Assembly: GCA_026770705.1 (NCBI GenBank)
Contig: JANJGN010000150.1
Location: forward strand, 1,054,001-1,118,000
Direction of reading: 5' to 3'
Origin: Isurus oxyrinchus
Taxonomy: Eukaryota
Length of the DNA: 64,000 nt
Under the pieces are notes generated by a model. That model worked only from the letters and a program-made list of their open reading frames with translations. It was not told where the DNA came from and did no database searches. Within the stretch, counting starts at the first letter, position 1. Each line of letters starts with the position of its first letter. Shown here in pieces: positions 30,601-62,419 of this stretch. The position numbers were made by a program, and so were the translations under genes.

Positions 30601-31388
30601 GTCACTACTGAGGGAGTGCTGCACTGTCGGAGTGTCAGTACTGAGGCAGTGCTGCACTGTCGGAGGGTCAGTACTGAGGGAGTGCTGCACTGTCGGAGGG
30701 TAGGTACTGAGGGAGTGCTGCACTGTCGGAGGGTCACTACTGAGGGAGTGCTGCACTGTCGGAGGGTAGGTACTGAGGGAGTGCTGCACTGTCGGAGTGT
30801 CAGTACTGAGGCAGTGCTGCACTGTCGGAGGGTCAGTAGTGAGGGAGTGCTGCACTGTCGGAGAGTCAGTACTGAGGGGGTGCTGCACTGTGCGAGGGTC
30901 AGTACTGAGGGGGTGCTGCACTGTCGCATAGTCAATATTCAAGTGGTGCTGCCTTCTCGAAGAGGCAGTTGTGAGGGAGTGCCGCACTGTCAGAAGCCAG
31001 CACTGAGAGTACATTGTAGTGTTCAAGGTGCTGTCTTTCAGAACAGTTGTATAATGCTGACCATGTTTACCCTCTCAGGTGGTCGTATAAGATCCCACGG
31101 CCACATTTCCAACACTATAGCAGTGACACCCTTCAACAAAAATTTCTTCATTTGCGTGAGGTTCTTTGGATGTCTTTGAAAAAAAGGGTTAAACGCTCTG
31201 AGCCACGACTGACACTAACGAGGCTGCACAATAATTTAACCCTATCAGTGCCAGTAAATGATGTGAGGATGTCTTCTGTTTCCATTTCTCTGTAGGGTAA
31301 ACAGAACGTGCTGATTACTGAGCCCCGGAACACAACCAGAGACACAACTAGTGAGGGGGAGACCCCAGCTCCCCTGGGATCTCTCTGA
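16..31388 (+). CDS. Gene A: giant Siglec-family type I membrane receptor (V-set + C2 + 24 tandem Ig repeats + TM + short tail); spliced, 5' signal exon outside window
   Basis: 29 GT-AG exons join in one frame: 369+297+24x282+97+82+93 nt, plus 1 nt from the upstream exon, gives 2569 codons including the stop. Siglec V-set motifs and a TM exon are present. Confidence 0.85.
785..1081 (+). CDS. Gene A domain 2 (C2-set Ig) exon
   Basis: ttag| and |gtaagt. [41 protein letters not shown] is typical of Siglec domain 2, including the extra inter-domain Cys. Confidence 0.92.
1230..1550. repeat. 33-bp minisatellite (gtgcagcactccctcagtactgaccctctgaca)n
   Basis: About 10 visible tandem units. Confidence 0.9.
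1683..1964 (+). CDS. Gene A Ig repeat exon 1 of 24
   Basis: ttttag|..|gtgagt, 282 nt, phase 1-1; [33 protein letters not shown]. Confidence 0.88.
2525..3321 (-). mobile_element. 5'-truncated CR1/L2-clade LINE 3' end
   Basis: The minus-strand ORF contains [29 protein letters not shown] (C-terminal to RT). It has an (ataagacc)n tail and is absent from the sister intron copies. Confidence 0.9.
3808..4089 (+). CDS. Gene A Ig repeat exon 2
   Basis: 282 nt, AG/GT intact, open frame. Confidence 0.88.
4871..5043 (-). mobile_element. Short 3' fragment of the same LINE family
   Basis: Matches 2525-2690 and interrupts the caccaccttc|..caagggcaattagg sequence seen intact in other copies. Confidence 0.8.
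5258..5539 (+). CDS. Gene A Ig repeat exon 3 (tyrosine-corner Y>C variant, GDCQC)
   Basis: 282 nt, AG/GT intact, open frame. Confidence 0.85.
6034..6315 (+). CDS. Gene A Ig repeat exon 4
   Basis: 282 nt, AG/GT intact, open frame. Confidence 0.88.
7315..7596 (+). CDS. Gene A Ig repeat exon 5
   Basis: 282 nt, AG/GT intact, open frame. Confidence 0.88.
8270..8551 (+). CDS. Gene A Ig repeat exon 6
   Basis: 282 nt, AG/GT intact, open frame. Confidence 0.88.
9577..9858 (+). CDS. Gene A Ig repeat exon 7
   Basis: 282 nt, AG/GT intact, open frame. Confidence 0.88.
10614..10895 (+). CDS. Gene A Ig repeat exon 8
   Basis: 282 nt, AG/GT intact, open frame. Confidence 0.88.
11707..11988 (+). CDS. Gene A Ig repeat exon 9
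   Basis: 282 nt, AG/GT intact, open frame. Confidence 0.88.
12751..13032 (+). CDS. Gene A Ig repeat exon 10
   Basis: 282 nt, AG/GT intact, open frame (IEWNS variant). Confidence 0.88.
13975..14256 (+). CDS. Gene A Ig repeat exon 11
   Basis: 282 nt, AG/GT intact, open frame. Confidence 0.88.
15014..15295 (+). CDS. Gene A Ig repeat exon 12
   Basis: 282 nt, AG/GT intact, open frame. Confidence 0.88.
16099..16380 (+). CDS. Gene A Ig repeat exon 13
   Basis: 282 nt, AG/GT intact, open frame. Confidence 0.88.
17104..17385 (+). CDS. Gene A Ig repeat exon 14
   Basis: 282 nt, AG/GT intact, open frame. Confidence 0.88.
18168..18449 (+). CDS. Gene A Ig repeat exon 15
   Basis: 282 nt, AG/GT intact, open frame (IEWNS variant, copy of exon 10). 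Confidence 0.88.
19398..19679 (+). CDS. Gene A Ig repeat exon 16
   Basis: 282 nt, AG/GT intact, open frame. Confidence 0.88.
20437..20718 (+). CDS. Gene A Ig repeat exon 17
   Basis: 282 nt, AG/GT intact, open frame. Confidence 0.88.
21511..21792 (+). CDS. Gene A Ig repeat exon 18
   Basis: 282 nt, AG/GT intact, open frame. Confidence 0.88.
22912..23193 (+). CDS. Gene A Ig repeat exon 19
   Basis: 282 nt, AG/GT intact, open frame. Confidence 0.88.
23949..24230 (+). CDS. Gene A Ig repeat exon 20
   Basis: 282 nt, AG/GT intact, same protein sequence as exon 18. Confidence 0.85.
25354..25635 (+). CDS. Gene A Ig repeat exon 21
   Basis: 282 nt, AG/GT intact, open frame. Confidence 0.88.
26316..26597 (+). 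CDS. Gene A Ig repeat exon 22
   Basis: 282 nt, AG/GT intact, open frame. Confidence 0.88.
27304..27585 (+). CDS. Gene A Ig repeat exon 23 (extra Cys, NRTCS)
   Basis: 282 nt, AG/GT intact, open frame. Confidence 0.88.
28339..28620 (+). CDS. Gene A Ig repeat exon 24 (membrane-proximal)
   Basis: 282 nt, AG/GT intact; followed by a different intron lacking the CA tract. Confidence 0.88.
29438..29534 (+). CDS. Gene A transmembrane exon
   Basis: tttacag|..|gtaagt, phase 1-2; (C)[32 protein letters not shown], with no charged residue in the TM. Confidence 0.9.
30206..30287 (+). CDS. Gene A cytoplasmic exon 1
   Basis: tgcag|..|gtacag, phase 2-0; [27 protein letters not shown]; paralogous exon at 58496. 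Confidence 0.8.
30500..30990. repeat. 33-bp minisatellite, reverse orientation
   Basis: (agtactgagggagtgctgcactgtcggagggtc)n. Confidence 0.9.
31296..31388 (+). CDS. Gene A last coding exon (stop at 31386-31388; ITIM/ITSM-like remnant out of frame to 31545)
   Basis: tgtag| [30 protein letters not shown]. One extra nt relative to the paralog leaves ILYANI and TEYTQI in a shifted frame. Confidence 0.75.
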   Translation, partial: GKQNVLITEPRNTTRDTTSEGETPAPLGSL

Positions 31389-31837
31389 AGGTCCAGTGGG
31401 AGGCGATGCTGGACATGGGAATCCTGACAAACCCGACGAGATTCTCTACGCCAACATCAACTTTTCAAAGCTGCCCAGCGGTGACAGGACTGTGCACAGG
31501 AGCGAGGACACGGAATACACACAGATCAGGTTCCAGAAAAACTGAGTGCGAAACAGGGAGCGGGGCTGTGGGGTGTGTGCAGCCAACATGGTCAAATAGT
31601 AATGAACAGAAATATGATGTTGCTCAACTTTTTTTTTATTGGTTCTGAGTGAGCTTTCTGAATGCTGTACCTTTTTCCATGCTGTAAAAGATTGTGAGAA
31701 GCTTATGAATTATCTATAATTTTACATCTGTTAATACAAGGTGAGGTGAGAATGACTGCCTTTGACATCAAGGCTGCATTTAACCGAGTGTGGCCTCTAG
31801 GAGCCCGAGCAAAACTGGAGTCAGTGTGAATCAGGGG

Positions 31838-32751
31838 TGGTACGAAAGTATAATTGTTTGCATAATATTTTCCTGGTTTGTTGTAAACTAGGTTTCTGGG
31901 TGTGAGTGTAGATGTGTGTCTGTCTGTGTGGTTTAATTACATCTGGAGTCAGGTAGACTGCAAGTTTGAGATTATCAAAAGAAGCTAGATGTAGAAATGT
32001 ACTTGAAATGCTAATGAGAACACATGGAGTCTGCCTTAGCATGTAAGGTGTGAAGGGGTTGTTTAGATTTCAAAGGGATGTCGGTCTGTTTAGGACAAGC
32101 CCAACAAGCAAAGCTAAGGAGTTTTTTTTTTAATTTTACCCAAACTTCATTGACAATATTGGCAACATGAAAGTTTATATTATGGGAAAGGTACAGTTCC
32201 AAAGACATATGGAACAATGGAATTTACATATCAAAGAGAGAGAAACTTTTATAAAGGAGAATGAAAGGCTATGTTGGGGGCCATGTAAGATCTAACAGGA
32301 GTGTGTGAAACAGGCTTGAAGAAGCCTCCAGGCATTTGTGCATAAGTCTGTTATGTTCAGTAAATAAAGTTGGAGAAATCCATTTAGAATTCCAGTGTCA
32401 AGTGTGTGCTGTGTTAACTCGCTGGATTTGTTTTTAATCTAAAATCTTATTTTGGACTGTTGCCTTAAACGGGCTCTGTAACTGGGAGTCAGGTTAATTA
32501 GGAATTTGAGAATTTATTTTAGCTGTAACTAACTGTGGCATTATGTATGTGCTTGAAATCTTTTATTTTGTTAATAAATATCTTAATTGAATTTTTAAAA
32601 TCTCTAAAGGTTGTGGTCAACTCATTACTCCTGAATTCAGTGCACGCTTCTTGTATTAAATACAAATTGCAAAACTATTGTGATAGAATGACCAATTTTC
32701 CCTTGTGGATTTGGAGCACCAAGCACACATCATCTGCCATGTCATGTCACA
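31838..32751. mobile_element. Probable solo LTR inserted into a CR1-like fragment
   Basis: TG...CA ends with gggg/ggga flanks; splits otherwise contiguous LINE-like sequence; paralog at about 60038-60950. Confidence 0.5.
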
Positions 32752-33830
32752 GGGAAAACTCTCCACTCGTTGGATTCATACCAAGTACAAAGGAAGGTGG
32801 TTGTGGTTGTTGGAGGTCAGTCATCTCAATTCCAGGACATCACCGCAGGAGTTGCTCAGGGTAGTGTCCTAGGCCCAAACATCTTCAGCTGATTCATCAA
32901 TGACATTCATTCTATCAGATGGTCAGAATTATGGAAGGTTGCTGATGATTGCACAACGTTCAACATCATTCATGACTCATCAGATGCTGAAGCAGTCCAT
33001 GTCCAAATGCAGCAAGACCTGGACAATATCCAGGCTTGGCCTGACAAGTGACAAGCAACATTCATGCCACACAAGTGCCAGGCAATGACCATCTCCAACC
33101 AGAGAGAATATATCCATCTCCCCTTAGCGTCCAATGGCATCACCATTACTGAATCCCCCACTATCAACTTTCTGGGGGTTAACATTGACCAGAAACTGAA
33201 CTGGACTAGCCATATAAATACTGTGACTACAAAAGCAGGCCAGAGGCTGGGAATCCTGTGGTGAGTAACTCGCCTCCTGACTCCCCAAAGTCTGTCCACC
33301 AACCTCAAGGCACAGGTCAGGAGTGTGTTGGAATACTCCCCACTTGCCTAGATGAGTACAGCTCCATCAACACTCAAGAAGCTCGACACCGTCCAGGACA
33401 AAGCAGCCCCGCTTGATTTGCACCCCATCCACAAACATTCTCTCCCTCCACAACTGACGCACAGTGGCAGCAGTGTGTGTACCATCTACAAGATGCAACA
33501 CAGGGATTCACCAAGCCTCCTTAGACAGCACCTTCCAAACCCACGACCACTACCATCTAGAAGGACAAGGGCAGCAAACACATGGGAACACCACCACCTG
33601 GAAGTTCCCCTCCAAGCCACTTACCATCCTGATTTGCAGATATATCGCCATTCCTTCACTATCTCTGGGACAGAATCCTGCAACACCCTCCCAAACAGTT
33701 CTGTGGGTGTACATACACCACAGGGACTGCAGCAGCTCAAGAAGGCAGCTCACCCCCATATTCTCAAGGACAATTAGGGATGGGCAATAAATTCTGGCCT
33801 AGCCAGTGTCGTCCACATCCCATGAATGAA
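32752..33830 (+). mobile_element. Decayed CR1-like LINE (RT region to 3' end)
   Basis: QGSVLGP/ADD-like RT remnants and a caagg.caattagggatgggcaataaa tail; paralog at 60960-62010. Confidence 0.8.
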
Positions 33831-34229
33831 TTAAATAAAGAAGTAACTAAAATGCTCTGACATTTCTGTACATTTTTATCAAATTAAACACATACTCTTA
33901 TGAATAATTCCATTCTCCAAGGCACCACTTCCTGTTGTCACATGCCCTTCTGATTATTTAAATTCCTGTGTCATTGGTAATGGAACATTCCCATGTAAAC
34001 ATGTCACACTGTAATTACAGCCTCCTGCCAGTGGTGGTGCTCTAGTGTCCTAGTTTTGCTTCTCAGAGACTGGAGGAGCTCTATACGTTGTGTTTACAAT
34101 ATGAGTAACACTCAGGGGTGACCAGGGGGATTCTTTCGGCCAAGTTTATGATGTTGCTAAGATACAATGGCCCCATGGGATTTTTCCTACTGCGTTTACA
34201 AGGTTGAATTGAAGAGATTTTTGAAGTGT

Positions 34230-34470
34230 CTGGCACAGTTTTATAAAGGTCCCCGCACTGCGTTCAGGTCTGGGGCCTGCAGCTTAGGAAGGATATATTG
34301 TCCATGGAGAGGATGCTGTACCGATTCACCAGAATGATCCCGGGGCTGAAAGGGTTAAATCCCGAGGACAGGTTGCACAGACCAGGCTTGTGTTCCCTCG
34401 AGTCTCGAAGATTAAGGGGTGATCTAATCGAGGGGTTTATGATGATTAAAGGCTTTGATATGGGCAATAG
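34230..34470 (+). mobile_element. CR1/L2-like LINE fragment
   Basis: RFTRMIPGLKGL..SLESRRLRGDLIE. Confidence 0.75.
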
Positions 34471-35300
34471 AGAGAACGCAGCAGCTCATTGAACTTTGTC
34501 CAGCGCTGATGGGCTCGTATTGCACTCACCACAGCCGCTATTTGAACCCAGGCCCTCTTGGTTGCTGCAGGATCATTACGGTGACCAGCCGAATACAGGG
34601 CTGCTCTCCTCTTCTGGATCTCTTCCACCAAAACAGGAAGGTCCTATCAGGAGAGCACGGAGCAGCTGGACCCAGCCCTTCCCCAGCGTCCCCGCTGTGT
34701 GACATTCTGTCAACGGAAAGGTAAGGTGAAAAGGGTCACGGTCCATTCAGATTACAAAGCTCCCGTTGACTTTTGTGTGCTTGTCCACACGAACCATTTT
34801 CACCGCATCACCAGTGATTGTTGGGAAGGTTTGGTGGAGAGACCGGCTCTGCATGAATGCTCGGTGCCGGGTATGTTGCGGCTGTGACTCTGTGGGAACA
34901 CGCGGTGCTCCGTCACCACCCACAGCCCTACCGGTTTCCTCCCTCTGACTCACGCTGTTATGTCGTGACAGTGAGCAGCTGCGAGGGACCTGGGCAAGGG
35001 TCAACAGTGTGGGCACCTGCTGATGGACGGGTGGCAAGGGGGCAAATGGATGTGATAATGAGCATGGCACTGTCCATCATTCGTCCACGCTCTGAGTCTT
35101 TGGCAGCTAACCACATGACTGCAGAATATCTGTACCAGTGAGTGGTGGTGGGACAATGCCAACTCCGAGTCTGTGTCTTGTGAATCCATCTCATGTTTTC
35201 ACTTAAGCCCACAGAAACCCACAGGAAACCCACAGAGTGACAGTCACTGGGAAAGACACTCGCTCCTTGTGGCTTCACGTTTTAACCATATCCTGTCTGA
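34470..35300 (-). mobile_element. Decayed PIF/Harbinger-like fragment (Myb/SANT-like remnant)
   Basis: VEEIQKRRAALY..TKRAWVQIAAVVSA..KFNELLRS resembles Harbinger Myb/SANT proteins; boundaries approximate. Confidence 0.5.
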
Positions 35301-37334: not shown

Positions 37335-37665
37335 TCTGACAGTGCAGCACTCCCTCAGTACTGACCCTCTGACAGTGCAGCACTCCCTCAGTACTGACCC
37401 GCCGACAGTGCAGCATTCCCTCAGTACTGACCCTCTGACAGTGCAGCACTCCCTCAGTACTGTCCCTCCGACAGTGCAGCACTCCCTCAGTACTGTCCCT
37501 CCGACAGTGCAGCCCTCCCTCAGTACTGACTTTCTGATAGTGCTGTGCCCCCTCAATACTGTCCCTCTGACAGTGCAGCACTCCCTCAGTACTGACCCTC
37601 TGGCAGTGCAGCACTTCCTCAGTACTGACCCTCCAACAATTCTGACATCCCTCAGCACTCCCTCA
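37335..37665. repeat. 33-bp minisatellite
   Basis: About 10 units. Confidence 0.9.
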
Positions 37666-37729: not shown

Positions 37730-40085
37730 TCAGAGAGAGAGAGAGTGTGTGTGGGAGAGAGAGCAAGAGACTGTGTGTGTGAGAGAGTGTGAGAGAGAGA
37801 GAATGTGAGAGAGTGTGCATGAGAAAGTGTGTGAGAGAGTGTGTGAGAGAGAGAGAATGTGAGAGACTGTATGTAAGACAGTGTGCATGGGAGAGATTGA
37901 GAGTGTGTGCATATTTGAGAGAGGGAGCAAGTGTGTGTGTGAGGAAGTGTGTGTGAGTGTGAGAGAGTGTGTGTATGTGACTGTGCGAGAGTGTGTTTGA
38001 AATAGGGCGAGTGTGCATGTTTGAGAGAGAGAGAGTGTGNNNNNNNNNNNNNNNNNNNNNNNNNNNNNNNNNNNNNNNNNNNNNNNNNNNNNNNNNNNNN
38101 NNNNNNNNNNNNNNNNNNNNNNNNNNNNNNNNNNNNNNNNNNNNNNNNNNNNNNNNNNNNNNNNNNNNNNNNNNNNNNNNNNNNNNNNNNNNNNNNNNNN
38201 NNNNNNNNNNNNNNNNNNNNNNNNNNNNNNNNNNNNNNNNNNNNNNNNNNNNNNNNNNNNNNNNNNNNNNNNNNNNNNNNNNNNNNNNNNNNNNNNNNNN
38301 NNNNNNNGTTTGACAGAATGTGTGCATGTGTGAGAGAGTGTGTGTGAGAGAGAGTGTGTGTGTGAGAGTGTGTGTGTGTGACAGTGTGTTTGTTTGATAG
38401 AGACTGTGCGCATGTGTGAGAGTGTGTGTGAGAGAGTGTGTGTGTGTGACAGTGTGTATGTTTGACAGTGTCTGTGTTTGACAGAGTGTGTGCATGTGTG
38501 AGAGAGAGTGTGTGAGAGAAAGTGTGTGTGTGAGAGTGTGTGTGTGTGACAGTGTGTGTGTTTGATAGAGACTGTGTGCATGTGTGATAGAGAGTGTGTT
38601 TGAGAGAGAGTGTGTTTGAGAGAGAGAGAGTGTGTGTGAGTGAGAGTGTGTATGTGTTTGAGATAGAGAATGTCTGTGCGAGAGTGTGTGTTTGAGAGAG
38701 GGATTGTGTGTGTGAGAGAGTGTGTGTAAGCGAAAGAGTGTGTGTGAGAGAGTGTCTGTACGAGAGTGTGTGTTTGAGAATGTTTGTGAGAGAGAGAGAG
38801 TTTGTGTGAGTGAGTATGTATGTGTTTGAGATAGAGAATGTGCGAGAGTGTGTGTTTGAGAGAGAGATTGTGTGTGTGAGAGAGTGTGTATGAGAGTGTG
38901 TCTGTGTGAGAGAGAGTGTCAGTGCGAGAGAGTGTGTTTTTGGGAGAGGGAGCAAGAATGTGTGCGTGTGAGAGAGATAGAGCAGAAGAGTGTGATAGAG
39001 AGAGCTTGTGAGTGTTAGAGAGAGAATGTGTGCGTGTGTGAGAGAGAGAGAGAGCAGAAGAGTGCAATAGAGAGAGATTGTGATTGTTAGAGAGAGAATG
39101 TGGGTGAGAGAGAGAGATAGAGCAGAAGAGTGTGATAGAGAGAGATTGTGAGTGTTAGAGAGAGAATGTGTGTGTGTGAGAGAGAGATAGAGCAGAAGAG
39201 TGTGATGGAGAGAGCTTGTGAGTGTTAGAGAGAGAATGTGTGTGTGTGAGAGAGAGAGATAGAGCAGAAGAGTGTGATAGAGAGAGATTGTGAGTGTTAG
39301 AGAGAGAATGTGTGTGTGTGAGAGAGAGAGAGATAGAGCAGAAGAGTGTGATAGAGAGAGATTGTGAGTGTTAGAGAGAATGTGTGTGTGTGAGAGAGAG
39401 ATAAAGCAGGAGAGTGTGATAGAGAGAGATTGTGAGTGTTAGAGAGAGAATGTGTGTGTGAGAGAGAGAGAGAGAGCAGAAGAGTGTGATAGAGAGAGAT
39501 TGTGAGTGTTAGAGAGAGAATGTGTGTGTGTGTGTGAGAGAGATAGAGCAGAAGAGTGCGATAGAGAGAGATTGTGAGTGTTAGAGAGAGAATGTGTGTG
39601 TGTGTGTGAGAGAGATAGAGCAGAAGAGTGCGATAGAGAGAGATTGTGAGTGTTAGAGAGAGAATGTGTGTGTGAGAGAGAGAGAGATAGAGCAGAAGAG
39701 TGCGATAGAGAGAGATTGTGAGTGTTAGTGAGAGAATGTGTGCGTGTGTGTGAGAGAGAGATAGAGCAGAAGAGTGCGACAGAGAGAGATTGTGAGTGTT
39801 AGAGAGAGAATGTGTGTGTGTGAGAGAGAGATAGAGCAGAAGAGTGCAGTAGAGAGAGATTGTGAGTGTTAGAGAGAGAATGTGTGTGTGTGAGAGAGAG
39901 AGAGATAGAGCAGAAGAGTGTGATAGAGAGAGATTGTGAGTGTTAGAGAGAGAATGTGTGTCTGTGAGAGAGACAGAGATAGAGCAGAAGAGTGTGATAG
40001 AGAGAGATTGTGAGTGTTAGAGAGAGAATGTATGTGAGAGAGAGAGAGATAGAGCAGAAGAGTGTGATAGAGAGAGATTGTGAGG
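37730..40085. repeat. GA/GT compound microsatellite grading into a ~60-66-bp minisatellite (from about 38960)
   Basis: Unit gagagatagagcagaagagtgtgatagagagagattgtgagtgttagagagagaatgtgtgt repeated about 17 times. Confidence 0.9.
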
Positions 40086-40398: not shown

Positions 40399-43300
40399 GT
40401 ACAAATTCATTACTGATCGGAACTCAGGGAATTGGATTCTTTCCTGGAGTGAGGAAGTGAACATTTAATTTTAGAGAACAGGGTTAGTGATCACACAGAG
40501 AGTGAGTGAATAGCGAGTCAGAGAATATAGCAAAAGAAAAAGACTCATACGGACTCGAAACGTCAACTCTGTTTCTCTCTCCACAGATGCTGTCAGACCT
40601 GCTGAGTTTTTCCAGCATTTTCTGTTTGTGCATCAGAGAGCTTGTTTCAATAGGAATGACAGTGCATTTATATAGCACCTTTAATGCAGTAAAACATCCT
40701 TATTGCGTCACAGGATTCCCCCACAAGGGGTAACATCCCCTCAGCATCCACCCTGTCAAACCCCCCACCACCTCAGAATCTTATATGTTTCAATAAGATC
40801 ACCTCTCATTCTTCTAAACTCCAATGGATACAGGGCCCAACCTGCTCAACATTTCCTCATAAGACAAACCCCCTTCATCCCAGGAATCAGCCCAGTGAAC
40901 CTCCTCTGAACTGCCTCCAATGCAGAGTCTATCCCTCCCTAAGTAAGGAGACCAGAACTGTACACACTGCTCCTGATACAATCTCACCAACGCCCTGTAC
41001 ATTTGTAGCAAGACTCCCCTCCTTTTATACTCCATCCCTTTGCAATAAAGGCCAACATTCCACTTGCCTTCCTCATTCCGTGCTGTTCCTGAATGCTGAC
41101 TTTCTGTGATTCATGTACAAGGACACCCAGATCCCTCTGTGTCACATTCTGTAGACTCTCTCCATTGAAGTAATATACTGCTTTTTGATGTCCTGTCCCC
41201 TCCCTTGTTGCCTTTCAGGAGTGACGTCAGAGGGATGGTCTATGAAGGCGCTGCCTCAGAGGGCCATCAGCAGCTCTTGTGTGGTTATTCCGTGTAGCTT
41301 TGACTTTCCTTCCCACTCTTACACAGCACTGCACGGAGCTTGGTATAAATATTGGTATAGATGGAAATATACCATCACATACACCAAAGATCCCAATTAT
41401 GGGATGGCCACATTCGTGGGACGTGCTAAAATAATCGGCGACTTGGAAGGGAAGAATTGTTCGGTGAGGATTGACAGTCTCAGAGCTGAAGATAGTGATG
41501 TGTATTACTTTTATGTGGATGTGGAGGGCTACACAGATCACACTTTTACAGAACCAGTCCAACTCCAGGTTCTTGGTAAGTCCCAGTTCCTTTCACACTC
41601 AGTCTCTCAGCACAAGGGGGTCATGTTCTCATCTCAGAGCCAGGCAGTCATGGGTTCAATTCCTGCTCCAGGAGATGTCAGAACAAAGTCCAGGATGTGA
41701 TCAGGCACAGTACTGAGGGAGTGCCGCACTGTCAGAGGGTCAGTATTGAGGGAGTGCTGCAGTGTCAAAGGATCAGTACTGAGGGAGTGCTGCACTGTCA
41801 GAGGTCAGTGAAAAGGGAGTGCTGCACTGTCAGAAGGTCAGTACTGAGGGAGTGCTGCAGTGTCGTATGGTCAGTACTGAGGGAGTGCTGCACTGTCAGA
41901 GGGTCAGTACTGAGGGAGTACTGCACTGTCAGAGGGTCAGTACCGAGGGGGTGCTGCACTGTTAGAGTGTCAATACTGAGGGGCTGCTGCACATTCAGAG
42001 AGTCAGTACTGATGGGGTGCTGCACTGTTGGAGGGTCAGTACTGAGGGAATGCTGCACTGTCAGAGGGTCAGTACTGAGGGAGTGCTGCACTGTCGAAGG
42101 GTAAGTACTGATGGAGTGCTGCACTGTCAGAAGATCAGTACTGAGTGAGTGCTGCACTGTCAGATGGTCAGTACTGAGGGAGTGCTGCACTGTCAGAAGG
42201 TCAGTACTGAGGGGGTGCCGCACAGTTAGAGTGTCAATACTGAGGGGGTGCTGCACTTTCAGAGAATCAGTACTGATGGGGTGCTGCACTGTTGGAGGGT
42301 CAGTACTGAGGGAGTGCTGCACTGTCAGAGGGTCAGTACTGAGGGAGTGCTGCACTGTCGAAGGGTCAGTACTGAGGGAGTGCTGCACTGTCAGAAGGTC
42401 AGTACTGAGGGAGTGCTGCATTGTCAGAAGGTCAGTACTGAGGGAGTGCTGCACTGTCGGATGGTCAGTACTGAGGGAGTGCTGCACTGTCAGAGGGTCA
42501 GTACTGAGGGAGTGCTGCACTGTCAGAGGGTCTGTACTGAGGTGGTGCTGCACTGTTAGAGTGTCAATACTGAGGGGGTGCTGCACTTTCAGAGAGTCAG
42601 TACTGATGGGGTGCTGCACTGTCGGAGGGTCAGTACTGAGGGAGTGCTGCACTGTCAGAGGGTCAGTACTGAGGGAGTACTGCACTATCAGAGTGTCAGT
42701 ACTGAGGGAGTGCTGCAGTGTCGGAGTGTCAGTACTGAGGGAGTTCTGCATGGTTGGGGGTCAGTGCTGCGTGAGTGCTCCACAGTCTGAGGATCATTGG
42801 CAAAGCAGTGGGTAGTGATAAGGAGAGATTGGGCACGAGAGGGGCAGGATCAGGGTGAGGTGGGCAGACACATAGCTGATGCATTTTAGTGCAGTGAAGT
42901 GTGAAGTGACGCACTTTGTCAGGATGAATACAGAAAGATATTGGACACGAACAATTTGGACAAGTGTTGGACAATAGAGACCTGGGTGTCTCTCTGCACA
43001 CATTCTGAAAAATTAAAGGGCAACTTGTTGAGGGGATTAAGAAAGCAAATATTTTCCTTGTGTTAACAGACTGAGGAACCGAGTTAAAAGCAAAGAGATC
43101 ATGCAGGAACTTTATAAATCACTGGTTAGAACTCAGCTGGAATATTGTTCAGAACGCTGGGCCTCCACACTTCAGGAAAGATGTAAGAGCTTCAGAAAGG
43201 GTGTCAAAGAGGACAAAACAGTAAAAACTGGGACATAAGAGTCCTGCTCGAAACTGGTCTTGTATAGCTTAACATATAACACCAGTAAAACTGGGAAATA

Positions 43301-55300: not shown

Positions 55301-58300
55301 ATACCCTCTGCGGACTGTATTGCTGGGCTCCACTAGACTGGTCCAGGCACCGCAACCACATCTTCAGCATCCCGGGTCTGTGCTACCAAGTTACGAGTTG
55401 CTGCCTGAGCCTCATTATAGCGTCGCTCTGCTGCAGTCTGAGGCCTCTGCACGTGTGTCATCAGCCACAACCACTGCGGGTAGTCCTTGTCCCCAAGGAG
55501 CCAACCCTGCAGCCTCTGTGGACCCTGGAAAACTGCAGGGATCTGAGAGTGACTCAGGATGTAGGCTATGTGCGCACTCCCTGTAAACCGTGTGCATACC
55601 ACAGGATGTGTTGCTGCTGGTCACATACCAACTGCATATTCAATGAGTGGAAACCCTTGTGGTTGATGAAGTCCACTGGGTGTAGCGATGGAGAACTGAG
55701 CGCCACATGAGTGCGGTCAATCGTACCCTGCACCTATGGGAATCCCGAGATCAGGGCAAATCGAAAGGCCCTTGCATCCTGGCTGTCCGGGTCCCGGGCA
55801 AAATGCATAAAGTTGTTGCCATGGAGAAGATGCATCCGGGACCTCATGGATGTATTTGTGGGTGGAGAATTGTGATATCCCACAGAGGTCGCCTGTGGAG
55901 CCCTGAAAGGAGACACTGGCAGAGAAATTGAGCACCACGGTCACTGTCACAGGCACTGGCAGTGGATGCCCTCTATGTTCCCTTGGTACAGTAAGTGGCA
56001 GATGTGAGCCAACAGGTCCCTAGACATGCACAGACATCAGTGACGCTGGTTCTCAGTCATCTGCAGGAATGACAGGCGGTGTCTATAGACTCTGGGTGTC
56101 GCTAGGCGCTGACCAGTCACGGCTCACTGTCGCTCCTCGACAGCGTATGCGAGACCTCCACTGCCCCTTCTTCATGAGGTTGCTGTTCCTGCCTTTGTGC
56201 GGCCAGGAGCCTCAGTCACTCTCTCCTCCGTCTTCTACAGTCTCCATGGACCATCAGGCACACAGCTAGGTCACCAGGGTCCATCATCCCGACATGGCCC
56301 TCCTGCACCATGAAAAAGAGAGAGAGAGAGACTTGGTTATCGTGGCTGTACTTAGCACCTTTCCTGGCCCTGTGTGACTGCCCCTCAATGCTTCCCGGGA
56401 AGTGCTGGTCACCGCTTGGACGGCCAGAGATGAGTGCGCTGCATGGCTGCCCCCTCAACCCGTGACATGCGGGACACTGGTCCAAACCGAGATGCTGAGA
56501 GACCTGAGAGAGTTTTGTCTGTGGAAGTCAGAGGCTTGTAACATCAAAGCAGCTGTAAGCCTACACCTGTCTGCAAAGGAACCAAAGTGAAAGGAACCTC
56601 ATTTGGAATTTGTGAGGTTAAAATGCTTTGCCTGGTGTCTGCTTAAAGTCTATGGGTTGTCTTAGAGGAGATTAGTTTGGGAATTTGATAAAAAGTTTTG
56701 ATCGTTGTAACTTTTAGCCATGTGTCTATATTTAACTTGTTATAAGTTGGTAAATTTAGTTTGATATAAAAACCTCTAGAGAACCGGTGGTCTTATTCCT
56801 GAATTTTGAGCTGCATCTCAAACATTCCACTGGGAAATATAGGTTTTAACAGTTGTTTAAAGTTCCCCTCTGGGATTTTAAACCACAGCTTTTACCAACT
56901 GCTGTATTGTAACATCTATAAATGTTACATAGATTACATCGATAAATATTATATATAAATATTACAAAGATTACATCGATAAATATTACATATAAATATT
57001 AGATAGGTTATATGGAAATGCAAGAAGTTTATTCATAAATTGCTTAGAAATTCCTGAAACTCTCAACAGCCAATGAAGCAGTTTCGAAGTGAGCTCACTG
57101 TTGTATTGTTGGAAACGCAGCTACTGATTTGTGCACAGCAAGATTCCAACAATCAGCATTGTGATAATGAACTGATAATCGATTATTTTAGTGAGGTTAG
57201 TTGATTCATACAAAGAGATTACATTTAGGAGGTGGATCACTAATAACCTTTTAGGGAGGGAAACCTGTCTGGGTGTATATGTGACTCCAGTCTCAAACAC
57301 CAATGTAATTAACTCTGACCTGCCCTCTGAACTGGTCTCCCAGTTTGGGACAAACCAGTGGTTCAGGAGGAAGACCCCCCACCACCTTCTCAAGGGGAAA
57401 CTAGGGATGGACAATAAATGTCAGCATTGCCCGAGAATGAGTATTTAAACATTGAGTGAGTGTATCGCTTCTCGAGATACATCGGAGCATCATTCTAAAC
57501 CTGTAGTGCAGTAATTAATGGCTGTTTTTACAGGTAGAGACTGCAGTAAATGGACAGTAGGATTGCTCACGGCTGGGATCATGTTGAGTGTTTTCCTGGC
57601 TGGAATCTTCATCTTCATCTGTGTGAGAAAGTAAGTCTGAAGATTTAACTTGATTTTAATATAAACATTTGCTTCAATGTTCTTTCCTTAAGTCGGTGAT
57701 TGTTTCCCTTGGGATCAGCACCAGGTCCCTCTCGGTAAGTGGTCCCTGTGTCCACTCTGATCCGGAGAGAACCTTTCATTGTCCTGTATCCAGGTAAACA
57801 ATCACGAGACCCAGAGATTCCTCACTCTGCACGATTACTCCGGGATAAACATTTGCTTCAATGTTCTATCCTGAAGTCGGTGATTGTTTCCCTTGTGTTA
57901 AGCGCCAGATGCCTCTCCGTAACTGGTCTCTTTGTCCCTTATGATCCAGAGAGTGTTTTTCATTGCCCGTTATCCAGATGAATAATAATCAGTTGCTGTG
58001 ATCTGGAAGGTGCTGCCTGAAAGGGAGGTGGAAGCAGATTCAATAGGAACTTTCAAAAGGGGAATTGGATAAATACTTGAAGGGGCAAAATTTGAAGGGC
58101 TATGGGGGCAAGAGCAGGGGTGGAGGGGGGGTCAAAGATATGGCATGTTATTATAATGATATTATACCTTGGGCTTATTTACTGTACAAGACACAAAGCA
58201 CCAATCGCACACAGGGATTGGGTGAGAATGTTATGGGCTCATTTATCAAGAACAGTTATACATACGGATAAAGCTTGGAGGCATCAGAGCTGTGAGTGTG

Positions 58301-59747
58301 TGCTCTGCTCAAAGCAAAAGTGAAACTAAGATTGGATCACATGACACACTTCCATTATAGTGATGTCACGCTGATATCCCTTATTGGAACTAGAGACAGT
58401 CCAGTCATTGGTGTAAGGTTACAGTGGGCTTTGTGTCTGTGCTGCACTGACTCTCTGCTATATGATAACCACAGTGTGATATTGTGTTATTGCAGGAGAA
58501 AGACAGCGATGGAGGAGAGAGTTTCAGGGACCAGAGACATTGCATTGACCCCCAGTCCACTCTCTGTGAAGCACCAGGTACAGGAGCTGTTTACACTCAC
58601 TCCAAAGCTTCAACCCCAGTGTGTAGACAACACGTGTCCCAGATTCTCAGCCAGGTTACCCACTGACTTCTAACTGTGGAGTCAGCAATGGCTCAGTTTT
58701 TAGCATTGTCTCTTGCTCTCTCTCTCTCTCCCTCAGTCTCTCTTTCTCCAGAAACCTGAGCACAAAAATGCCGATACATCTGAGGTCAGCACTGGGGGAG
58801 AGCAACACAGAAGGAGAATCAGTACTGAGGGTGTGCTGCACCATTGGAGGGTCAGTAATGAGAGAGTGATGCATTGGAGAAGGCTCAGTACTGAGAGAGT
58901 GCTGCACTGTCAGAGGGTCAGTACTGAGAGACTGCTGCACTATCGGAGGGTCAGTACTGAGGGGGTGCTGCACTGTCGGAGGGTCAGAACTGAGGGAGTG
59001 CTGCACTGTCGGATGTTCAATACTGAGGGAGCGCCGCACTGTTGGAGGGTCCATATTGAAGGAATGCTGCCCTCTCGAAGGGGCAGTTCCAAGGGAGTGC
59101 CGCACTGTCAGGAGCCAGCACTGAGAGAACGTTGCATTGTTCAAAGTGCCATCTTGCAGAACAGTTGTGTAATGCTGACCATGTTTACCCTCTCAGGTGG
59201 GCATATAAGATCCAACATTATAGCAGTGACACACTTCAATAAAATTCCTTCATTGGCGTGAGGTGTTTTGGATGCCTGTGTTTGTGATGAATGGAGCACA
59301 AATCTCACGATCCAGATGGTAACTAGGACTTCCAGACTCAGGTGCGCAAGAGAGAGAGAGAGAGAGGGAAAGAGAGAGAGCGAAAAAAGGGTTAAACCCA
59401 CTGAGCCACGACTGACACTAACGAGGCTGCACAATAATTTAACCCTATCAGTGCCAGTAAATGATGTGAGGATGTCTTCTGTTTCCATTTCTCTGTAGGA
59501 TGAACAGAACATGCTGATTACTGAGCCCCGGGACACAACCAGAGACACAACTAGTGAGGGGCAGACCCCAGCTCCCCGGGGTCTCTCTGAAAGTCCAGTG
59601 GGAGGCGATGCTGGACATGGGAACCCCGACAAACCCGACGACCTTCTCTACGCCAACATCAACTTTTCAAAGCTGCCCAGCGGTGACAGGACTGTGCACA
59701 GGAGCGAGGACACGGAATACACACTGATTGGATTCCAGAAAAACTGA
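40353..59747 (+). CDS. Gene B: Siglec-family (CD22/MAG-like) inhibitory receptor, about 716 aa with 6 Ig domains if the defective repeat exons are skipped
   Basis: Exons of 46+357+288+4x258+97+82+249 nt give 717 codons including the stop: signal peptide, V, C2, repeats, TM, ITIM and ITSM-like motif. Confidence 0.82.
40730..41165 (-). mobile_element. CR1/L2-like LINE fragment
   Basis: MEYKRRGVLLQMYRALVRL..CVQFWSPY. Confidence 0.8.
41219..41575 (+). CDS. Gene B V-set Ig exon (Siglec-type, essential Arg replaced by Tyr)
   Basis: ttcag|..|gtaagt; GW..SSCVVIPCSFDFP..GRAKIIGDLEGKNCSVRIDSLRAEDSDVYYFYVD. Confidence 0.92.
41705..42770. repeat. 33-bp minisatellite, about 32 units with internal higher-order repetition
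   Basis: Visible; the variant block gttagagtgtcaatactgagggg recurs at about 41960, 42225 and 42555. Confidence 0.92.
43400..43860 (+). mobile_element. CR1/L2-like LINE 3' end
   Basis: LGLFSLEQRRLRGDLIEVYKMM..RTGGH..RRNFFTQRVV and an atgggctgaatggcctccttctg tail. Confidence 0.85.
43947..44234 (+). CDS. Gene B domain 2 (C2-set) exon
   Basis: ttacag|..|gtaagt; DVPDKPVI..CKCLDTCPDNHPNLTW..SALLTFNPSFKHHGRTLRCTCDYP. Confidence 0.9.
44290..44700 (+). mobile_element. CR1/L2-like LINE fragment
   Basis: agaaggctgagggggtgacctgatcgagg..aggagaaacttctttacccagagagt. Confidence 0.7.
45420..45677 (+). CDS. Gene B Ig repeat exon a
   Basis: 258 nt, phase 1-1; SPHNTSV..LSCSSDGNPAVHNFTWFK..YYCEATSILG (CD22/sialoadhesin-like C2). 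Confidence 0.88.
46093..46134 (+). ncRNA. Minimal type I hammerhead-ribozyme-like motif
   Basis: ATTCTGTC-CTGATGA-gtgaaagat-GAAA-AGCT-TT-GACAGAAT: 8-bp stem I, both core boxes and a palindromic stem III. Confidence 0.6.
47136..47187 (+). pseudogene. Gene B repeat b: truncated pseudo-exon
   Basis: Only the first ~50 nt of the exon remain, fused to downstream intron sequence; the donor is deleted. Confidence 0.85.
48210..48467 (+). CDS. Gene B Ig repeat exon c
   Basis: 258 nt, AG/GT intact, open frame. Confidence 0.88.
48883..48924 (+). ncRNA. Minimal hammerhead-like motif copy
   Basis: Same motif, with a gtgaaaaat stem II region. Confidence 0.58.
49908..50166 (+). pseudogene. Gene B repeat d: frameshifted exon (259 nt)
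   Basis: An A6 run instead of A5 at 49944-49949 leads to a stop at 49979-49981; this could be a homopolymer sequencing error. Confidence 0.65.
50574..50615 (+). ncRNA. Minimal hammerhead-like motif copy
   Basis: Same motif as 46093. Confidence 0.58.
51607..51864 (+). CDS. Gene B Ig repeat exon e
   Basis: 258 nt, AG/GT intact, open frame. Confidence 0.87.
53289..53546 (+). CDS. Gene B Ig repeat exon f
   Basis: 258 nt, AG/GT intact, open frame. Confidence 0.87.
53957..53998 (+). ncRNA. Minimal hammerhead-like motif copy
   Basis: Same motif as 46093. Confidence 0.58.
54025..56500. mobile_element. Decayed PIF/Harbinger DNA transposon (HARBI1-like DDE nuclease on -, Myb/SANT partner remnant on +)
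   Basis: Minus strand: GSAHIAYIL..GWLLGDKDYP..WLMT..AERRYNEAQAATRNLV and LKMWLRCLD..YSPQRVSHIVIVCCALYN. Plus strand: KLAHNRR..QTGG..LTELENRV. Both are frameshifted. Confidence 0.8.
56500..56914. mobile_element. Probable LTR 3' fragment
   Basis: AT-rich, loosely similar to 32500-32750, ends ..ttgtaaca. Confidence 0.35.
57534..57630 (+). CDS. Gene B transmembrane exon
   Basis: (C)[32 protein letters not shown]; 2 nt differences from the gene A exon. Confidence 0.9.
58496..58577 (+). CDS. Gene B cytoplasmic exon 1
   Basis: [27 protein letters not shown], phase 2-0. Confidence 0.82.
58785..59110. repeat. Degenerate 33-bp minisatellite
   Basis: Paralogous to 30500-30990 but more decayed. Confidence 0.8.
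59499..59747 (+). CDS. Gene B last coding exon with ITIM (LLYANI) and ITSM-like motif (TEYTLI)
   Basis: tgtag| open frame to tga; the tandem tyrosine motifs resemble those of CD33-related Siglecs. Confidence 0.9.
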   Translation, partial: DEQNMLITEPRDTTRDTTSEGQTPAPRGLSESPVGGDAGHGNPDKPDDLLYANINFSKLPSGDRTVHRSEDTEYTLIGFQKN

Positions 59748-60037
59748 GTGTGAAACAGGGAGCGGGGCTGTGGGGTGTGTGCAGCCAACATGGCCAAATA
59801 GTAATGAACAGAAATATGATGTTGCTCAATTTTTTTTATCAGTTCTGAGTGAGCTTTCTGAATGCTGCACCTTTTTCCATGCTGTAAAAGATTGTGAGAA
59901 GCTTATGAATTATGTATAATTTTACATCTGTTAATACAAGGTGAGGTGAGAGTGACTGCCTTTGACATCAAGGCTGCATTTGACCGAGTGTGGCATCTAG
60001 GAGCCCGAGTAAAACTGGAGTCAATGTGAATCAGGGG

Positions 60038-60950
60038 TGGTATGAAAATCCAATAACTTTCATAATATTTTTCTGGTTTGTTGTAAAGTAGGTTTATGGG
60101 TGTGAGTGTAGATGGGTCTGTCTGTGTGGTTTAATTACATCTGGAGTCAGGTAGACTATAAGCTTGAGATTATCAAAAGAAGCTAGGTGTAGAAATGTAC
60201 TGGAAATGTTGAAATGGAGGCTGTCTCAGCATGTAAGGTGTGAAGAGAATTTGCATTTTTAGATAAGTTAAGGGATTGTTTGGATTTCAAATGCACGCTG
60301 GTCTGTTTACAACTATCCTGATAAGCAAGGCTGAGGAGTGTTTTAATTTTTCCCAAAGTTTACTGACAATATTGGCAACATAAAAGTTATTATATTATTA
60401 GAAAGTTACAGTTCCAAAGACATATAAACAATCGAATTTACACATCAAAGAGGGAGAAACACATTTAAAGGAGAATGAAAGGCTATGTTGGGGGCCATGT
60501 AAGATCTAACAGGAGTGTGTGAAACAGGCTTGAAGAAGCCTCCAGGCATTTGTGCAAAAGTTTGTTATATTCAGTAAATAAAGTTGGAGAAACCCGTTTA
60601 GAATTCCAGTGTCAAGTGTGTGCTGTGCTAACTCGCTGGGTTTGTTTTTAATCTAAAATCTTATTTTGGACTGTTGCCTTAAACGGGGTATGTAACTGGG
60701 AGTCAGGTTAATTAGGAATGTTAGGATTTGTTTTAGTAGTAACTGCTGCCTTAGATACGTGCTTGAAATCTTTTATTTTGTCAATAAATATTTTAAATTA
60801 GTTTTTAAGATCTCTAGATGTCTTCATCGATTAATTTCTCCTGAATTCAGTACATGCATCTCGTAATAAATATAAATTGCAAAACTGTTGTGATAGCACA
60901 ATCAAGTTGCCATTGTGGATTTCGCACACATCATCTGCCATGTCATAAGG
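60038..60950. mobile_element. Probable solo LTR (paralog of 31838-32751)
   Basis: Same insertion point, tcagggg|tggta. Confidence 0.5.
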
Positions 60951-60959
60951 TGGGGGGGA

Positions 60960-62010
60960 AACACTCAGCTGGTTCGATTCGTACCTAGCACAAAGGTTGT
61001 GGTTGTTGGAGGTCATTCATCTCAGTTCCAGGACATCACCGCAGGAGTTGCTCAGTGTAGTGTCCTCGGCCCAACCATCTTCAGCTGCTTCATCAATGAC
61101 GTTCATTCTATCAGAAGGTCAGAATTATGGATGTTCGCTGATGATTGCACAATGTTTAGCACCATTCGTGACTCATCAGATACTGAAGCAGCCCATGTCC
61201 AAATGCAGCAAGACCTGGCCATTATCCAGGCTTGGCCTGACAAGTGGCAAGTAACTTTCATGCCACACAATTGCCAGGCAAAGACCATCTCCAACCAGAG
61301 AGAATCTATTAATTTCCCCTTGACATTCAATGGCATTACCATTGCTGAATCCCCCACTATCAACATTCTGGGGGTTACCATTGACCAGAAACTGAACTGG
61401 ACTAGCCATATAAATACTGTGGCCACAACACCAGGCCAGATGCTGGGAATCATGTGGTGAATAACTCACCTCCTGATTCCCCAAAGCCTGTCCACCATCT
61501 TCAAGGCACAGGTCAGGAGTGTGATGGAATACTCCCCACTTGCCTAGGTGGGTGCAGCTCTCACAACAGACAAGAAGCTCGACACCGTCCAGGACAAAGC
61601 ATCGCGTCTGATTGGCACCTCATCCACAAACATTCTCTCCCTCCACAACTGACGCACAGTGGCAGCAGTGTGTGTACCATCTACAAGATGCACCGCAGGG
61701 GCTCACCAACACTCCTTAGACGGCACCTTCCAAACACATGATCACTACCATCTCGAAGGACAAGGGCAGCAGACACATGGGAACACCACCACCTGGAAGT
61801 TCCCCTCCAAGTCACTCACCATCCTGACTTGGAAATATATCACCGTTCCTTCACTGTCGCTGGGTCAGAATCCTGCAACACCCTCCCAAACAGTTCTGTG
61901 GGTGTACATACACCACAGGGACTGCAGCAGCTCAAGAAGGCAGCTCACCCCCATATTCTCAAGGACAATTAGGGATGGGCAATAAATTCTGGCCTAGCCA
62001 GTGTCAGTGA
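60960..62010 (+). mobile_element. Decayed CR1-like LINE, RT region
   Basis: GVAQCSVLGPTIFSCFIND..MFADD..ILGVTIDQKLNWTSHI. Confidence 0.85.
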
Positions 62011-62419
62011 ATGAATACAAAAAAGAAGCAATTAAAATGCCCTGACATTTCTGTACATTTTTATCAAATTAAATACGTTCTCTAGTGAATAATTCCATTC
62101 TCCAAGGCACCACTTCCTGTAGTCACACGCCCTTCTGATTATTTAAATTCCTGTGTCATTGGTAATGGAACATTCCCATGTAAACATGTCACACTGTAAT
62201 TACAGCCTCCTGCCAGTGGTGGTGCTCTAGTGTCCTAGTTTTGCTTCTCAGAGACTGGAGGAGATCGATACGTTGTGTTTACAATATGAGTAACACTCAG
62301 GGGTGACCAGGGGGATTCTTTCGGCCAAGTTTATGATGTTGCTAAGATACAATGGCCCCATGGGATTTTTCCTACTGCGTTTACAAGGTTGAATTGAAGA
62401 GATTTTTGAAGTGTCTGGC

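What the first reader, a model, noticed from the sequence alone, without database searches (positions are those of the whole stretch)
31296..31545. One-base insertion removes both tyrosine motifs from the giant Siglec
Seen: gene A reads gctcccc-tggga-tctctctgaa where gene B reads gctcccc-gggg-tctctctgaa. With the same phase-0 acceptor, gene A stops at 31386-31388 and leaves ILYANI (31441) and TEYTQI out of frame. The nearby alternative acceptor (aacag, 31304) keeps the same frame, so it does not rescue the motifs. The stop is in the last exon, so NMD is not expected. Inference: a very long, Arg-positive, ITIM-less receptor that converges on the sialoadhesin design (long stalk, no tyrosine motif) from an inhibitory ancestor. 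The undecayed motifs suggest a recent or polymorphic change.
Basis: partly seen in the sequence, partly recalled or inferred. Interest (0 to 1): 0.78.

Follow-up and report, generated by a model that had tools for sequence, protein, structure and literature searches.

The report
Frameshifted signalling tail, giant shark Siglec
One very long shark immune-receptor gene of the Siglec type carries a single extra DNA letter that cuts off its inhibitory signalling tail, but an uncut version is transcribed too, so it looks like a recent loss variant in a fast-changing gene family.

Summary
Gene A has one base more than gene B at 31375. Read from the phase-0 acceptor at 31296 it stops at 31386-31388, leaving ILYANI (31441) and TEYTQI (31510) out of frame.

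RNA-like contigs of run X1 show GT..AG joints 29534>30206 and 30287>31296, so the frame is confirmed.

All 18 distinct homologous tail modules from shark Siglec models read through this site in frame, so the extra base is derived. Apart from it, gene A's out-of-frame part is almost the family consensus, so the change is young.

In X1, 69.2 of 156 depth units at 31375 lack the base. Both forms are transcribed, as alleles or as near-identical paralogues. Two DNA-type runs gave no depth at 31375.

The rest of gene A is intact: a V-set exon with the arginine, a C2 exon, and 24 of 24 Ig exons with AG/GT and no stops.

The best reading is a recent tail-truncating variant in a birth-and-death Siglec family. 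It resembles the human SIGLEC12 polymorphic frameshift. It is not shown to be a settled sialoadhesin-like design.

The scan noted many Siglec clusters in this genome, but not this frameshift.

The parts
16..384 (+). Gene A V-set exon (phase 1 to 1). The arginine of the FFRIE motif is at codon 321-323.
   Evidence: Pfam V-set 7.8e-14, Ig_CD22 8e-10; best solved relatives are Siglec-5 (5e-17), MAG, CD33, Siglec-10, Siglec-8 and sialoadhesin; FFRIE aligns with FFRVE of Siglec-5. Splice sites read.
785..1081 (+). Gene A C2-set exon
   Evidence: PF08205 C2-set_2, 1.6e-09. Boundaries read.
1683..28620 (+). Array of 24 near-identical Ig exons of 282 bases each, phase 1 to 1, with five N runs between them
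   Evidence: 24 ungapped copies, 93-97% identical to the last one; 24 of 24 have AG and GT and no stop. Ig_3 1.6e-11, I-set 1e-09; an X1 contig lies on 28400-28597, and a loose end after 28619 runs into the start of another Ig exon.
29438..29534 (+). Gene A transmembrane exon, with no charged residue in the hydrophobic core
   Evidence: X1 contig on 29438-29534 and joint 29534>30206 (GT..AG).
30206..30287 (+). Gene A first cytoplasmic exon; it enters with one base completing a codon and ends in phase 0
   Evidence: X1 contigs on 30206-30288 and joint 30285>31294, which with 'cut +2' is 30287>31296 (GT..AG).
31296..31388 (+). Coding part of gene A's last exon as assembled, premature stop included
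   Evidence: X1 contig carries the joint and runs on to 31374.
31375..31375 (+). The extra base (T) relative to gene B and to all homologous tails; it lies inside the conserved Arg codon
   Evidence: 'left out 1' at 31375 in X1 (69.2 of 156 depth, 2 contigs) and in X11 (1835.2 of 6083.1, 2 contigs).
31386..31388 (+). Premature TGA
31441..31458 (+). ILYANI (fits the ITIM pattern), out of frame in gene A
31510..31527 (+). TEYTQI (fits TxYxx[IV]), out of frame in gene A
31543..31545 (+). Stop codon of the ancestral tail frame. Transcribed sequence goes on at least to 31750.
   Evidence: X1 contig on 31445-31667 and depth in the bin 31643-31750.
59499..59747 (+). Gene B last exon, the in-frame comparator. 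Gene B's transmembrane exon is 57534-57630 and its first cytoplasmic exon is 58496-58577.

Best explanation
Gene A is a shark Siglec-family gene with one V-set exon (arginine present), one C2-set exon, 24 tandem Ig exons, a transmembrane exon and two cytoplasmic exons. In this assembly its last exon holds a genuine single-base insertion (T31375) inside the conserved Arg codon of the tail segment AP-R-DLSEG. Translation therefore ends at TGA 31386-31388. The receptor keeps its whole ectodomain and membrane anchor and a short cytoplasmic stub without tyrosine. It loses both the ITIM (ILYANI) and the distal TxYxxI motif (TEYTQI). Because the stop lies in the last exon, the mRNA should escape nonsense-mediated decay (inference from the exon-junction rule). 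Because the membrane span has no basic residue, the product should be signalling-silent rather than activating (inference). The change is young: the out-of-frame part is still almost the family consensus, and a form without the extra base is transcribed in the same species, either as the other allele or as a near-identical paralogue. I read it as a recent loss-of-signalling variant in a large birth-and-death gene family, not as an established sialoadhesin-like design.
For: The sequence and the frames are shown. In X1, six introns or intron parts have zero depth, while the exons are covered and GT..AG joints lie exactly at 29534>30206 and 30287>31296. At 31375 the X1 depth is 156, of which 69.2 (2 contigs) lacks the base; the remaining depth covers the place with no listed difference. 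No A>G row appears at 31379 or G>A at 31390 in any run, so the contigs lacking the base are not gene B. All 18 of 18 distinct tail modules in shark Siglec models read through the site in frame. The A-type-repeat models P0004 and P0017 are in frame. Gene A's post-site frame reads [30 protein letters not shown]...TEYTQIRFQKN, which by my count differs from the second tail of P0014 at 4 of 56 residues. Between A and B there are 5 differences in 78 bases before the site and 10 in 168 after it. The ectodomain is intact: 24 of 24 Ig exons have AG/GT and no stop. There is no charged residue in the membrane span and no tyrosine in the three cytoplasmic pieces.
Against: No DNA-type contig of the same species covers the site: X4 has depth 0 at 31371 and 31375, and X10 has 56.8 at 31371 but 0 at 31375. 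All runs were contigs, not raw reads, so allele counts are not possible. X1 may come from the assembled animal, so it is not independent proof. The genome holds very many Siglec paralogues (425 notes fit 'Siglec') with near-identical tail exons. Contigs with or without the base may therefore come from other copies, and contig breaks at 31374/31380 in X1 and at 31374 in X10 show a branch point in the graphs.
Confidence: 0.6

Rival explanations
1. This is a fixed, functional design. The giant, arginine-bearing receptor has lost its inhibitory tail for good and works as a non-signalling adhesion or capture receptor, analogous to sialoadhesin.
For: There are 26 intact Ig-type exons with the arginine. 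The transcript is spliced and present in RNA-like contigs. The stop is in the last exon, and the membrane span has no basic residue. Tails of the two orthologue-like models also show single motif changes: LLCANI in P0004 and MEYAQI in P0017. In X11, another species, part of the depth at the site shows no gap.
Against: The out-of-frame part shows no decay. A version without the base is co-transcribed. P0004 and P0017 keep the frame. Motif changes are common across the whole family, with only 5 of 18 modules keeping both motifs, so they are not special to this lineage. In X11, at least 5 contigs plus loose ends are one base shorter, i.e. in frame.
Confidence: 0.15
2. This is an assembly or consensus error. 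The animal's DNA has no extra base and gene A has a normal ITIM tail.
For: Contigs lacking the base, with otherwise A-like sequence, exist in X1 (69.2 of 156) and X11. No DNA-type contig of X4 or X10 covers 31375. The base sits between a C run and a G run, and the window has eight N runs.
Against: More than half of the X1 depth at 31375 (156 minus 69.2) covers the place with no listed difference. The X1 contigs shown in table 8 match gene A's exons with 0 other letters over 560 bases (records 2, 3, 5, 7, 8). The extra base is not a simple change in homopolymer length.
Confidence: 0.15
3. The frame is rescued at the RNA level, by an alternative acceptor or an unseen exon that restores the ITIM frame.
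For: Two AG sites would open the ITIM frame after its last upstream stop (exon starts at 31342 and 31369). Table 5 left 80 joints unshown.
Against: These two sites have only 8 and 7 pyrimidines in the 20 bases before them, against 17 at the used acceptor. The only joint into this exon shown for X1 is 30287>31296. No other copy of the tail exons lies in the window besides gene B's.
Confidence: 0.04

Closest known systems
Human SIGLEC12 polymorphic frameshift (PMC7876704; abstract seen in the listing)
   Same: It is a small frameshift in a Siglec gene of an inhibitory type, with intact and broken forms co-existing within one species, in a rapidly evolving family.
   Different: According to that abstract, the human frameshift eliminates the full-length protein. 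Here only the last 52 or so codons (the tyrosine motifs) are lost, and the ectodomain and anchor remain. Polymorphism is not proven here, because a paralogue is possible.
Sialoadhesin / Siglec-1
   Same: It has a long Ig stalk and a sialic-acid-binding arginine. Its tail has no immunomodulatory motif (PMC7226832, passages seen: 'contains no immunomodulatory motifs'; the count of 17 domains is recalled).
   Different: Gene A's exon still encodes both motifs one frame away, and orthologue-like models keep them in frame. The stalk is 24 near-identical recent tandem copies. The V-set is no closer to sialoadhesin (1.9e-14) than to Siglec-5 (5e-17) or MAG (1e-15).
Automatically annotated shark Siglec-like proteins, e.g. 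XP_041037176.1 'hemicentin-1-like' (Carcharodon carcharias, P0004) and XP_078389... 'intercellular adhesion molecule 5-like' (Cetorhinus maximus, P0017)
   Same: They share the Ig repeat unit, the transmembrane exon and the two-exon tail. The tail regions are 86-89% identical to one another.
   Different: Those models hold 4 and 5 repeats and begin inside the array. Their tails are in frame. No model longer than 816 residues with this tail was found in the 294-1390 residue range that could be searched.
Activating, DAP12-coupled Siglecs (Siglec-14, -15, -16; PMC7226832 passages)
   Same: They lack an ITIM.
   Different: They carry a basic residue in the membrane span. Gene A's span has none, so its loss of the ITIM does not make it an activating receptor.

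Membership tests
Siglec family (sialic-acid-binding Ig-like lectins) | N-terminal V-set Ig domain related to Siglec V-sets | tested here: met
   V-set 7.8e-14 and Ig_CD22 8e-10; the 17 best solved chains are all Siglecs (Siglec-5, MAG, CD33, Siglec-10, -8, sialoadhesin, Siglec-7).
Siglec family (sialic-acid-binding Ig-like lectins) | Canonical arginine in the V-set | tested here: met
   One search aligns FFRIE of gene A with FFRVE of Siglec-5. That this Arg is the canonical ligand-binding residue comes from the PMC12953582 abstract (listing) and from recall. Gene B has YYFYVD instead.
Siglec family (sialic-acid-binding Ig-like lectins) | C2-type Ig domains followed by a single membrane span | tested here: met
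   C2-set_2 1.6e-09; Ig_3 and I-set for the repeat; one hydrophobic 19-residue window with score up to 2.53 in exon 29438-29534.
Siglec family (sialic-acid-binding Ig-like lectins) | Binds sialic acid | not testable with these tools
   This needs a glycan-binding assay with the recombinant V-set.
Inhibitory Siglec (ITIM plus distal tyrosine motif) | Both tyrosine motifs in the translated frame | tested here: not met
   In gene A as assembled, the stop at 31386-31388 comes before both motifs. The feature is met in gene B.
Sialoadhesin (Siglec-1) orthologue | V-set closer to Siglec-1 than to other Siglecs | tested here: not met
   sialoadhesin 1.9e-14, against Siglec-5 5e-17, MAG 1e-15 and CD33 2.1e-15. 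No tree was built.
Sialoadhesin (Siglec-1) orthologue | Tail that natively lacks tyrosine motifs | tested here: not met
   The exon encodes both motifs one frame away. Models P0004 and P0017 with the same repeat keep them in frame.
Activating DAP12-type Siglec | Basic residue in the membrane span | tested here: not met
   the span [25 protein letters not shown] has no K or R.
Polymorphic frameshift allele (as in SIGLEC12) | Both forms at the same locus within the species | tested here: inconclusive
   both forms are in X1 (69.2 of 156 depth lacks the base), but contigs cannot tell an allele from a near-identical paralogue.

The most novel reading that the evidence does not exclude
Lamniform sharks may keep, fixed or as a balanced polymorphism, a signalling-silent Siglec of 26 or more Ig domains. 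It would be made from an inhibitory receptor by a one-base tail truncation and would act as a long-reach sialic-acid capture or decoy receptor beside its inhibitory relatives. That would be an independent, very recent origin of the sialoadhesin layout.
Probability: 0.15. Interest if true: 0.55.

Novelty: new member of a known kind. Interest (0 to 1): 0.3.

Why it matters
If the truncated form is common, it gives a natural pair of receptors with the same ectodomain, one with and one without an inhibitory tail. That is a clean system for asking what the tail contributes in a basal jawed vertebrate. It would also show that the quick gain and loss of Siglec signalling modules known from primates operates in sharks. 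As it stands, this is one broken-tail copy in a very large, fast-evolving family, which is the expected kind of event there. The 24-exon Ig array is the more unusual feature of the gene, but it was not the finding under test.

Tried and rejected
1. One search searched gene A's ITIM-frame open stretch (31315-31542) in the word-indexed protein collection and found no candidate. Only proteins of 0.55-1.75 times the query length are seen, so this says little.

2. One search tried to fetch the genomic loci of the Carcharodon and Cetorhinus orthologue models, to read the site in their DNA. Cross-species comparison therefore rests on gene models, which are in frame by construction, and on X10/X11 contigs.

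3. I considered gene B as the source of the contigs that lack the base, and rejected it. Gene B would also show G at 31379 and A at 31390, and no such rows appear. At about 94% identity, gene B falls under the 95% threshold. Other paralogues cannot be excluded.

4. I considered alternative acceptors that would restore the frame. Two candidates exist, both with poor pyrimidine tracts and no read support.

5. I looked for annotated giant relatives with this tail. None was longer than 816 residues among 17 and 8 hits. Lengths above 1390 residues could not be searched.

6. I searched the literature on shark Siglecs. One search found 22 papers with the terms and one search found 325; I looked at the listings only. 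The one shark hit, the whale shark genome paper, mentions Siglecs once in passing. I found no paper on shark Siglec tails in these two searches. Supplementary files were not opened and may list such genes.

7. I did not search or fold a joined (spliced) protein model; exons were searched one at a time. I did not fold any structure.
Full report
OBSERVATION. Gene A's last exon reads ...cagctcccctgggatctctctgaaggtcc.... Gene B reads GCTCCCCGGGGTCTCTCTGAA at 59571-59591. This was the only match in the window at up to 3 mismatches, with none expected by chance. In the alignment of the two 3' ends (633 columns, 91% mean identity) the only gap inside the exon is one base, T31375.

From the acceptor (AG 31294-31295, exon start 31296) the open frame gives [30 protein letters not shown] and then TGA at 31386-31388. 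The frame that holds ILYANI (31441) and TEYTQI (31510) runs to TGA 31543-31545 but is closed upstream by TGA 31312-31314. The third frame has several stops. The nearby AG at 31303-31304 gives an exon start 9 bases later, in the same frame.

GENE MODEL. Gene A in the window has these exons:
- A V-set exon at 16-384.
- A C2-set exon at 785-1081.
- 24 tandem Ig exons of 282 bases between 1683 and 28620. All 24 of 24 have AG and GT and no stop.
- A transmembrane exon at 29438-29534.
- A small cytoplasmic exon at 30206-30287.
- The last exon, from 31296.

The phases fit throughout: phase 1 through the Ig exons, two bases carried out of the transmembrane exon, and phase 0 into the last exon. Gene B has the same three 3' exons at 57534-57630, 58496-58577 and 59499-59747, at 97.9%, 96.3% and 94.3% identity. 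The flanking introns are 86-91% identical.

RNA EVIDENCE. In run X1 (coded; same species, judging by 0 other letters over the 560 exon bases listed in table 8) the intron bins have depth 0 and the exon bins are covered. Two contigs carry GT..AG joints at 29534>30206 and at 30285>31294, which with 'cut +2' is 30287>31296. Contigs continue to at least 31750, so this is the terminal exon with its 3' UTR.

WHAT THE FAMILY SAYS. The V-set is of Siglec type: Pfam V-set 7.8e-14 and Ig_CD22 8e-10. The best solved relatives are Siglec-5 at 5e-17, MAG, CD33, Siglec-10, Siglec-8, sialoadhesin and Siglec-7, with FFRIE aligned to FFRVE of Siglec-5.

A full scan of 1.84 billion representative proteins with gene B's last exon gave 11 hits. 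Their source names are automatic Siglec-like annotations from Cetorhinus, Carcharodon, Stegostoma, Hemiscyllium, Scyliorhinus, Rhincodon and Mustelus. Two word-indexed searches with the tails of P0004 and P0014 gave 17 and 8 hits.

My pattern found 22 tail modules in 19 of the 25 proteins held. I dropped one as too short (P0025) and three as identical to earlier ones (P0012, P0013, P0016). All 18 remaining distinct modules read through the site in frame, as AP(R/Q/W/G)(D/G/N)..SE followed by the LLY motif region. Six proteins were not captured by the pattern. The printed ends of P0007, P0022, P0023 and P0024 also run through a homologous segment, while P0010 and P0011 differ before the motif.

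Gene A's first piece matches the family up to ...ETPAP. Its second piece, read from 31375 in the other frame, is [10 protein letters not shown]...EILYANINF...TEYTQIRFQKN. By my count it differs from the second tail of Carcharodon P0014 at 4 of 56 residues. So the extra base is derived and lies inside the conserved Arg codon. The part behind it has not decayed. Between A and B there are 5 differences in 78 bases before the site and 10 in 168 after it. At most of these positions gene A carries the family's usual residue.

THE SITE IN THE RUNS (contigs only).
- At 31375, 'left out 1' appears in X1 for 69.2 of 156 depth (2 contigs) and in X11, another coded species, for 1835.2 of 6083.1 (2 contigs).
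- At 31371, 'left out 1' appears in X11 for 548.6 of 5222.6 (3 contigs).
- X11 loose ends read a variant that is also one base shorter.
- X4 has no depth at either place. X10 has 56.8 at 31371 and none at 31375.
- No run shows the gene-B letters at 31379 or 31390, so the shorter contigs are not gene B.
- X1 contigs break at 31374 and 31380, and an X10 contig stops at 31374, so this is a branch point in the assembly graphs.

I conclude that both the form with the base and an in-frame form with otherwise A-like sequence are transcribed in the window's species. Contigs cannot say whether the two are alleles or near-identical paralogues. The scan's own notes show a very large Siglec family in this genome (425 notes fit the word). 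No independent DNA run confirmed the base.

MECHANISM.
- Shown: the stop lies in the last exon. The membrane span ([25 protein letters not shown]) has no basic residue. The three cytoplasmic pieces up to the stop hold no tyrosine.
- Inferred: the mRNA escapes nonsense-mediated decay. The protein reaches the membrane with 26 Ig domains. It can neither recruit SH2 phosphatases nor pair with a DAP12-type adaptor, so it would bind ligand without signalling.

WHY NOT A SETTLED SIALOADHESIN-LIKE DESIGN. The two models with the same Ig repeat and junction, P0004 (Carcharodon) and P0017 (Cetorhinus), keep the frame. They do show single motif changes (LLCANI; MEYAQI), but such changes are common in the whole family. 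Of the 18 modules, 9 fit the ITIM pattern, 12 fit TxYxx[IV], 5 fit both and 2 fit neither. The V-set is no closer to sialoadhesin than to other Siglecs. The resemblance is one of layout only.

KNOWN PARALLELS. A polymorphic frameshift in human SIGLEC12 is described in PMC7876704 (abstract seen). PMC7226832 (passages seen) gives the ITIM signature as [I/V/L/S]-x-Y-x-x-[L/V]; that I is also accepted at the last position is recalled. [quoted passage not shown] It does not mention sharks (0 occurrences). My two searches for shark or cartilaginous-fish Siglecs gave only a passing mention in the whale shark genome paper.

LIMITS. Supplements were not opened. The number of Ig exons depends on an array with five N runs and a 4.9-kb block repeated at 97.3% identity, and I did not verify it.

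VERDICT. This is a real-looking, recent, tail-truncating one-base insertion in one member of a large shark Siglec family, with an in-frame form co-expressed. It is a new member of a known kind, and of modest interest.

Noticed in passing
window 1683-28620: The stalk of gene A is 24 Ig exons, 93-97% identical to the last one, each followed by an (AC)n-rich stretch or an N run. A 4.9-kb block (11162-16000) recurs at 16555-21412 with 97.3% identity, so the array has a higher-order repeat or is partly an assembly duplicate.
   Followed up: partly
window 30502-30991; also 37335-37633 on the other strand, and open stretches at 1170-1556, 41580-42812 and 58704-59258: A 33-base minisatellite (14.8 copies in gene A's last intron) recurs in several introns and between the genes. 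In the DNA-type runs its depth reaches millions, so it is a very abundant satellite in these sharks.
   Followed up: partly
window 41155-41697: Gene B's V-set has YYFYVD where gene A has YFFRIE, so gene B lacks the canonical arginine while keeping the in-frame ITIM tail. The Cetorhinus models P0016 and P0019 show the same.
   Followed up: partly
P0001, P0014, P0015 (Cetorhinus and Carcharodon models); window 31527-31531: Three gene models string two complete tail modules together (…TEYAQIR followed by RKTA…), apparently using a GT just before the end of the tail exon. Gene A has the same ATCAG|GT at 31527-31531, but the window holds no second tail module behind it.
   Followed up: partly
P0004 and P0017: The two orthologue-like models with gene A's Ig repeat each carry one motif change: Y to C in the proximal motif in Carcharodon, and T to M in the distal motif in Cetorhinus.
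   Followed up: partly
window 38327-40084: This is a long G/A/T-rich block of tandem repeats (periods 16-82; a 72-base unit in 15.6 copies) with a GC skew of 0.86, lying between the two genes next to an N run.
   Followed up: no
window 32500-35300 and 60900-63400: Similar retroelement-like open stretches (reverse-transcriptase-like translations) follow both genes' 3' ends. The duplicated segment therefore extends beyond the genes: 31180-32598 matches 59383-60808 at 89.7% identity.
   Followed up: no
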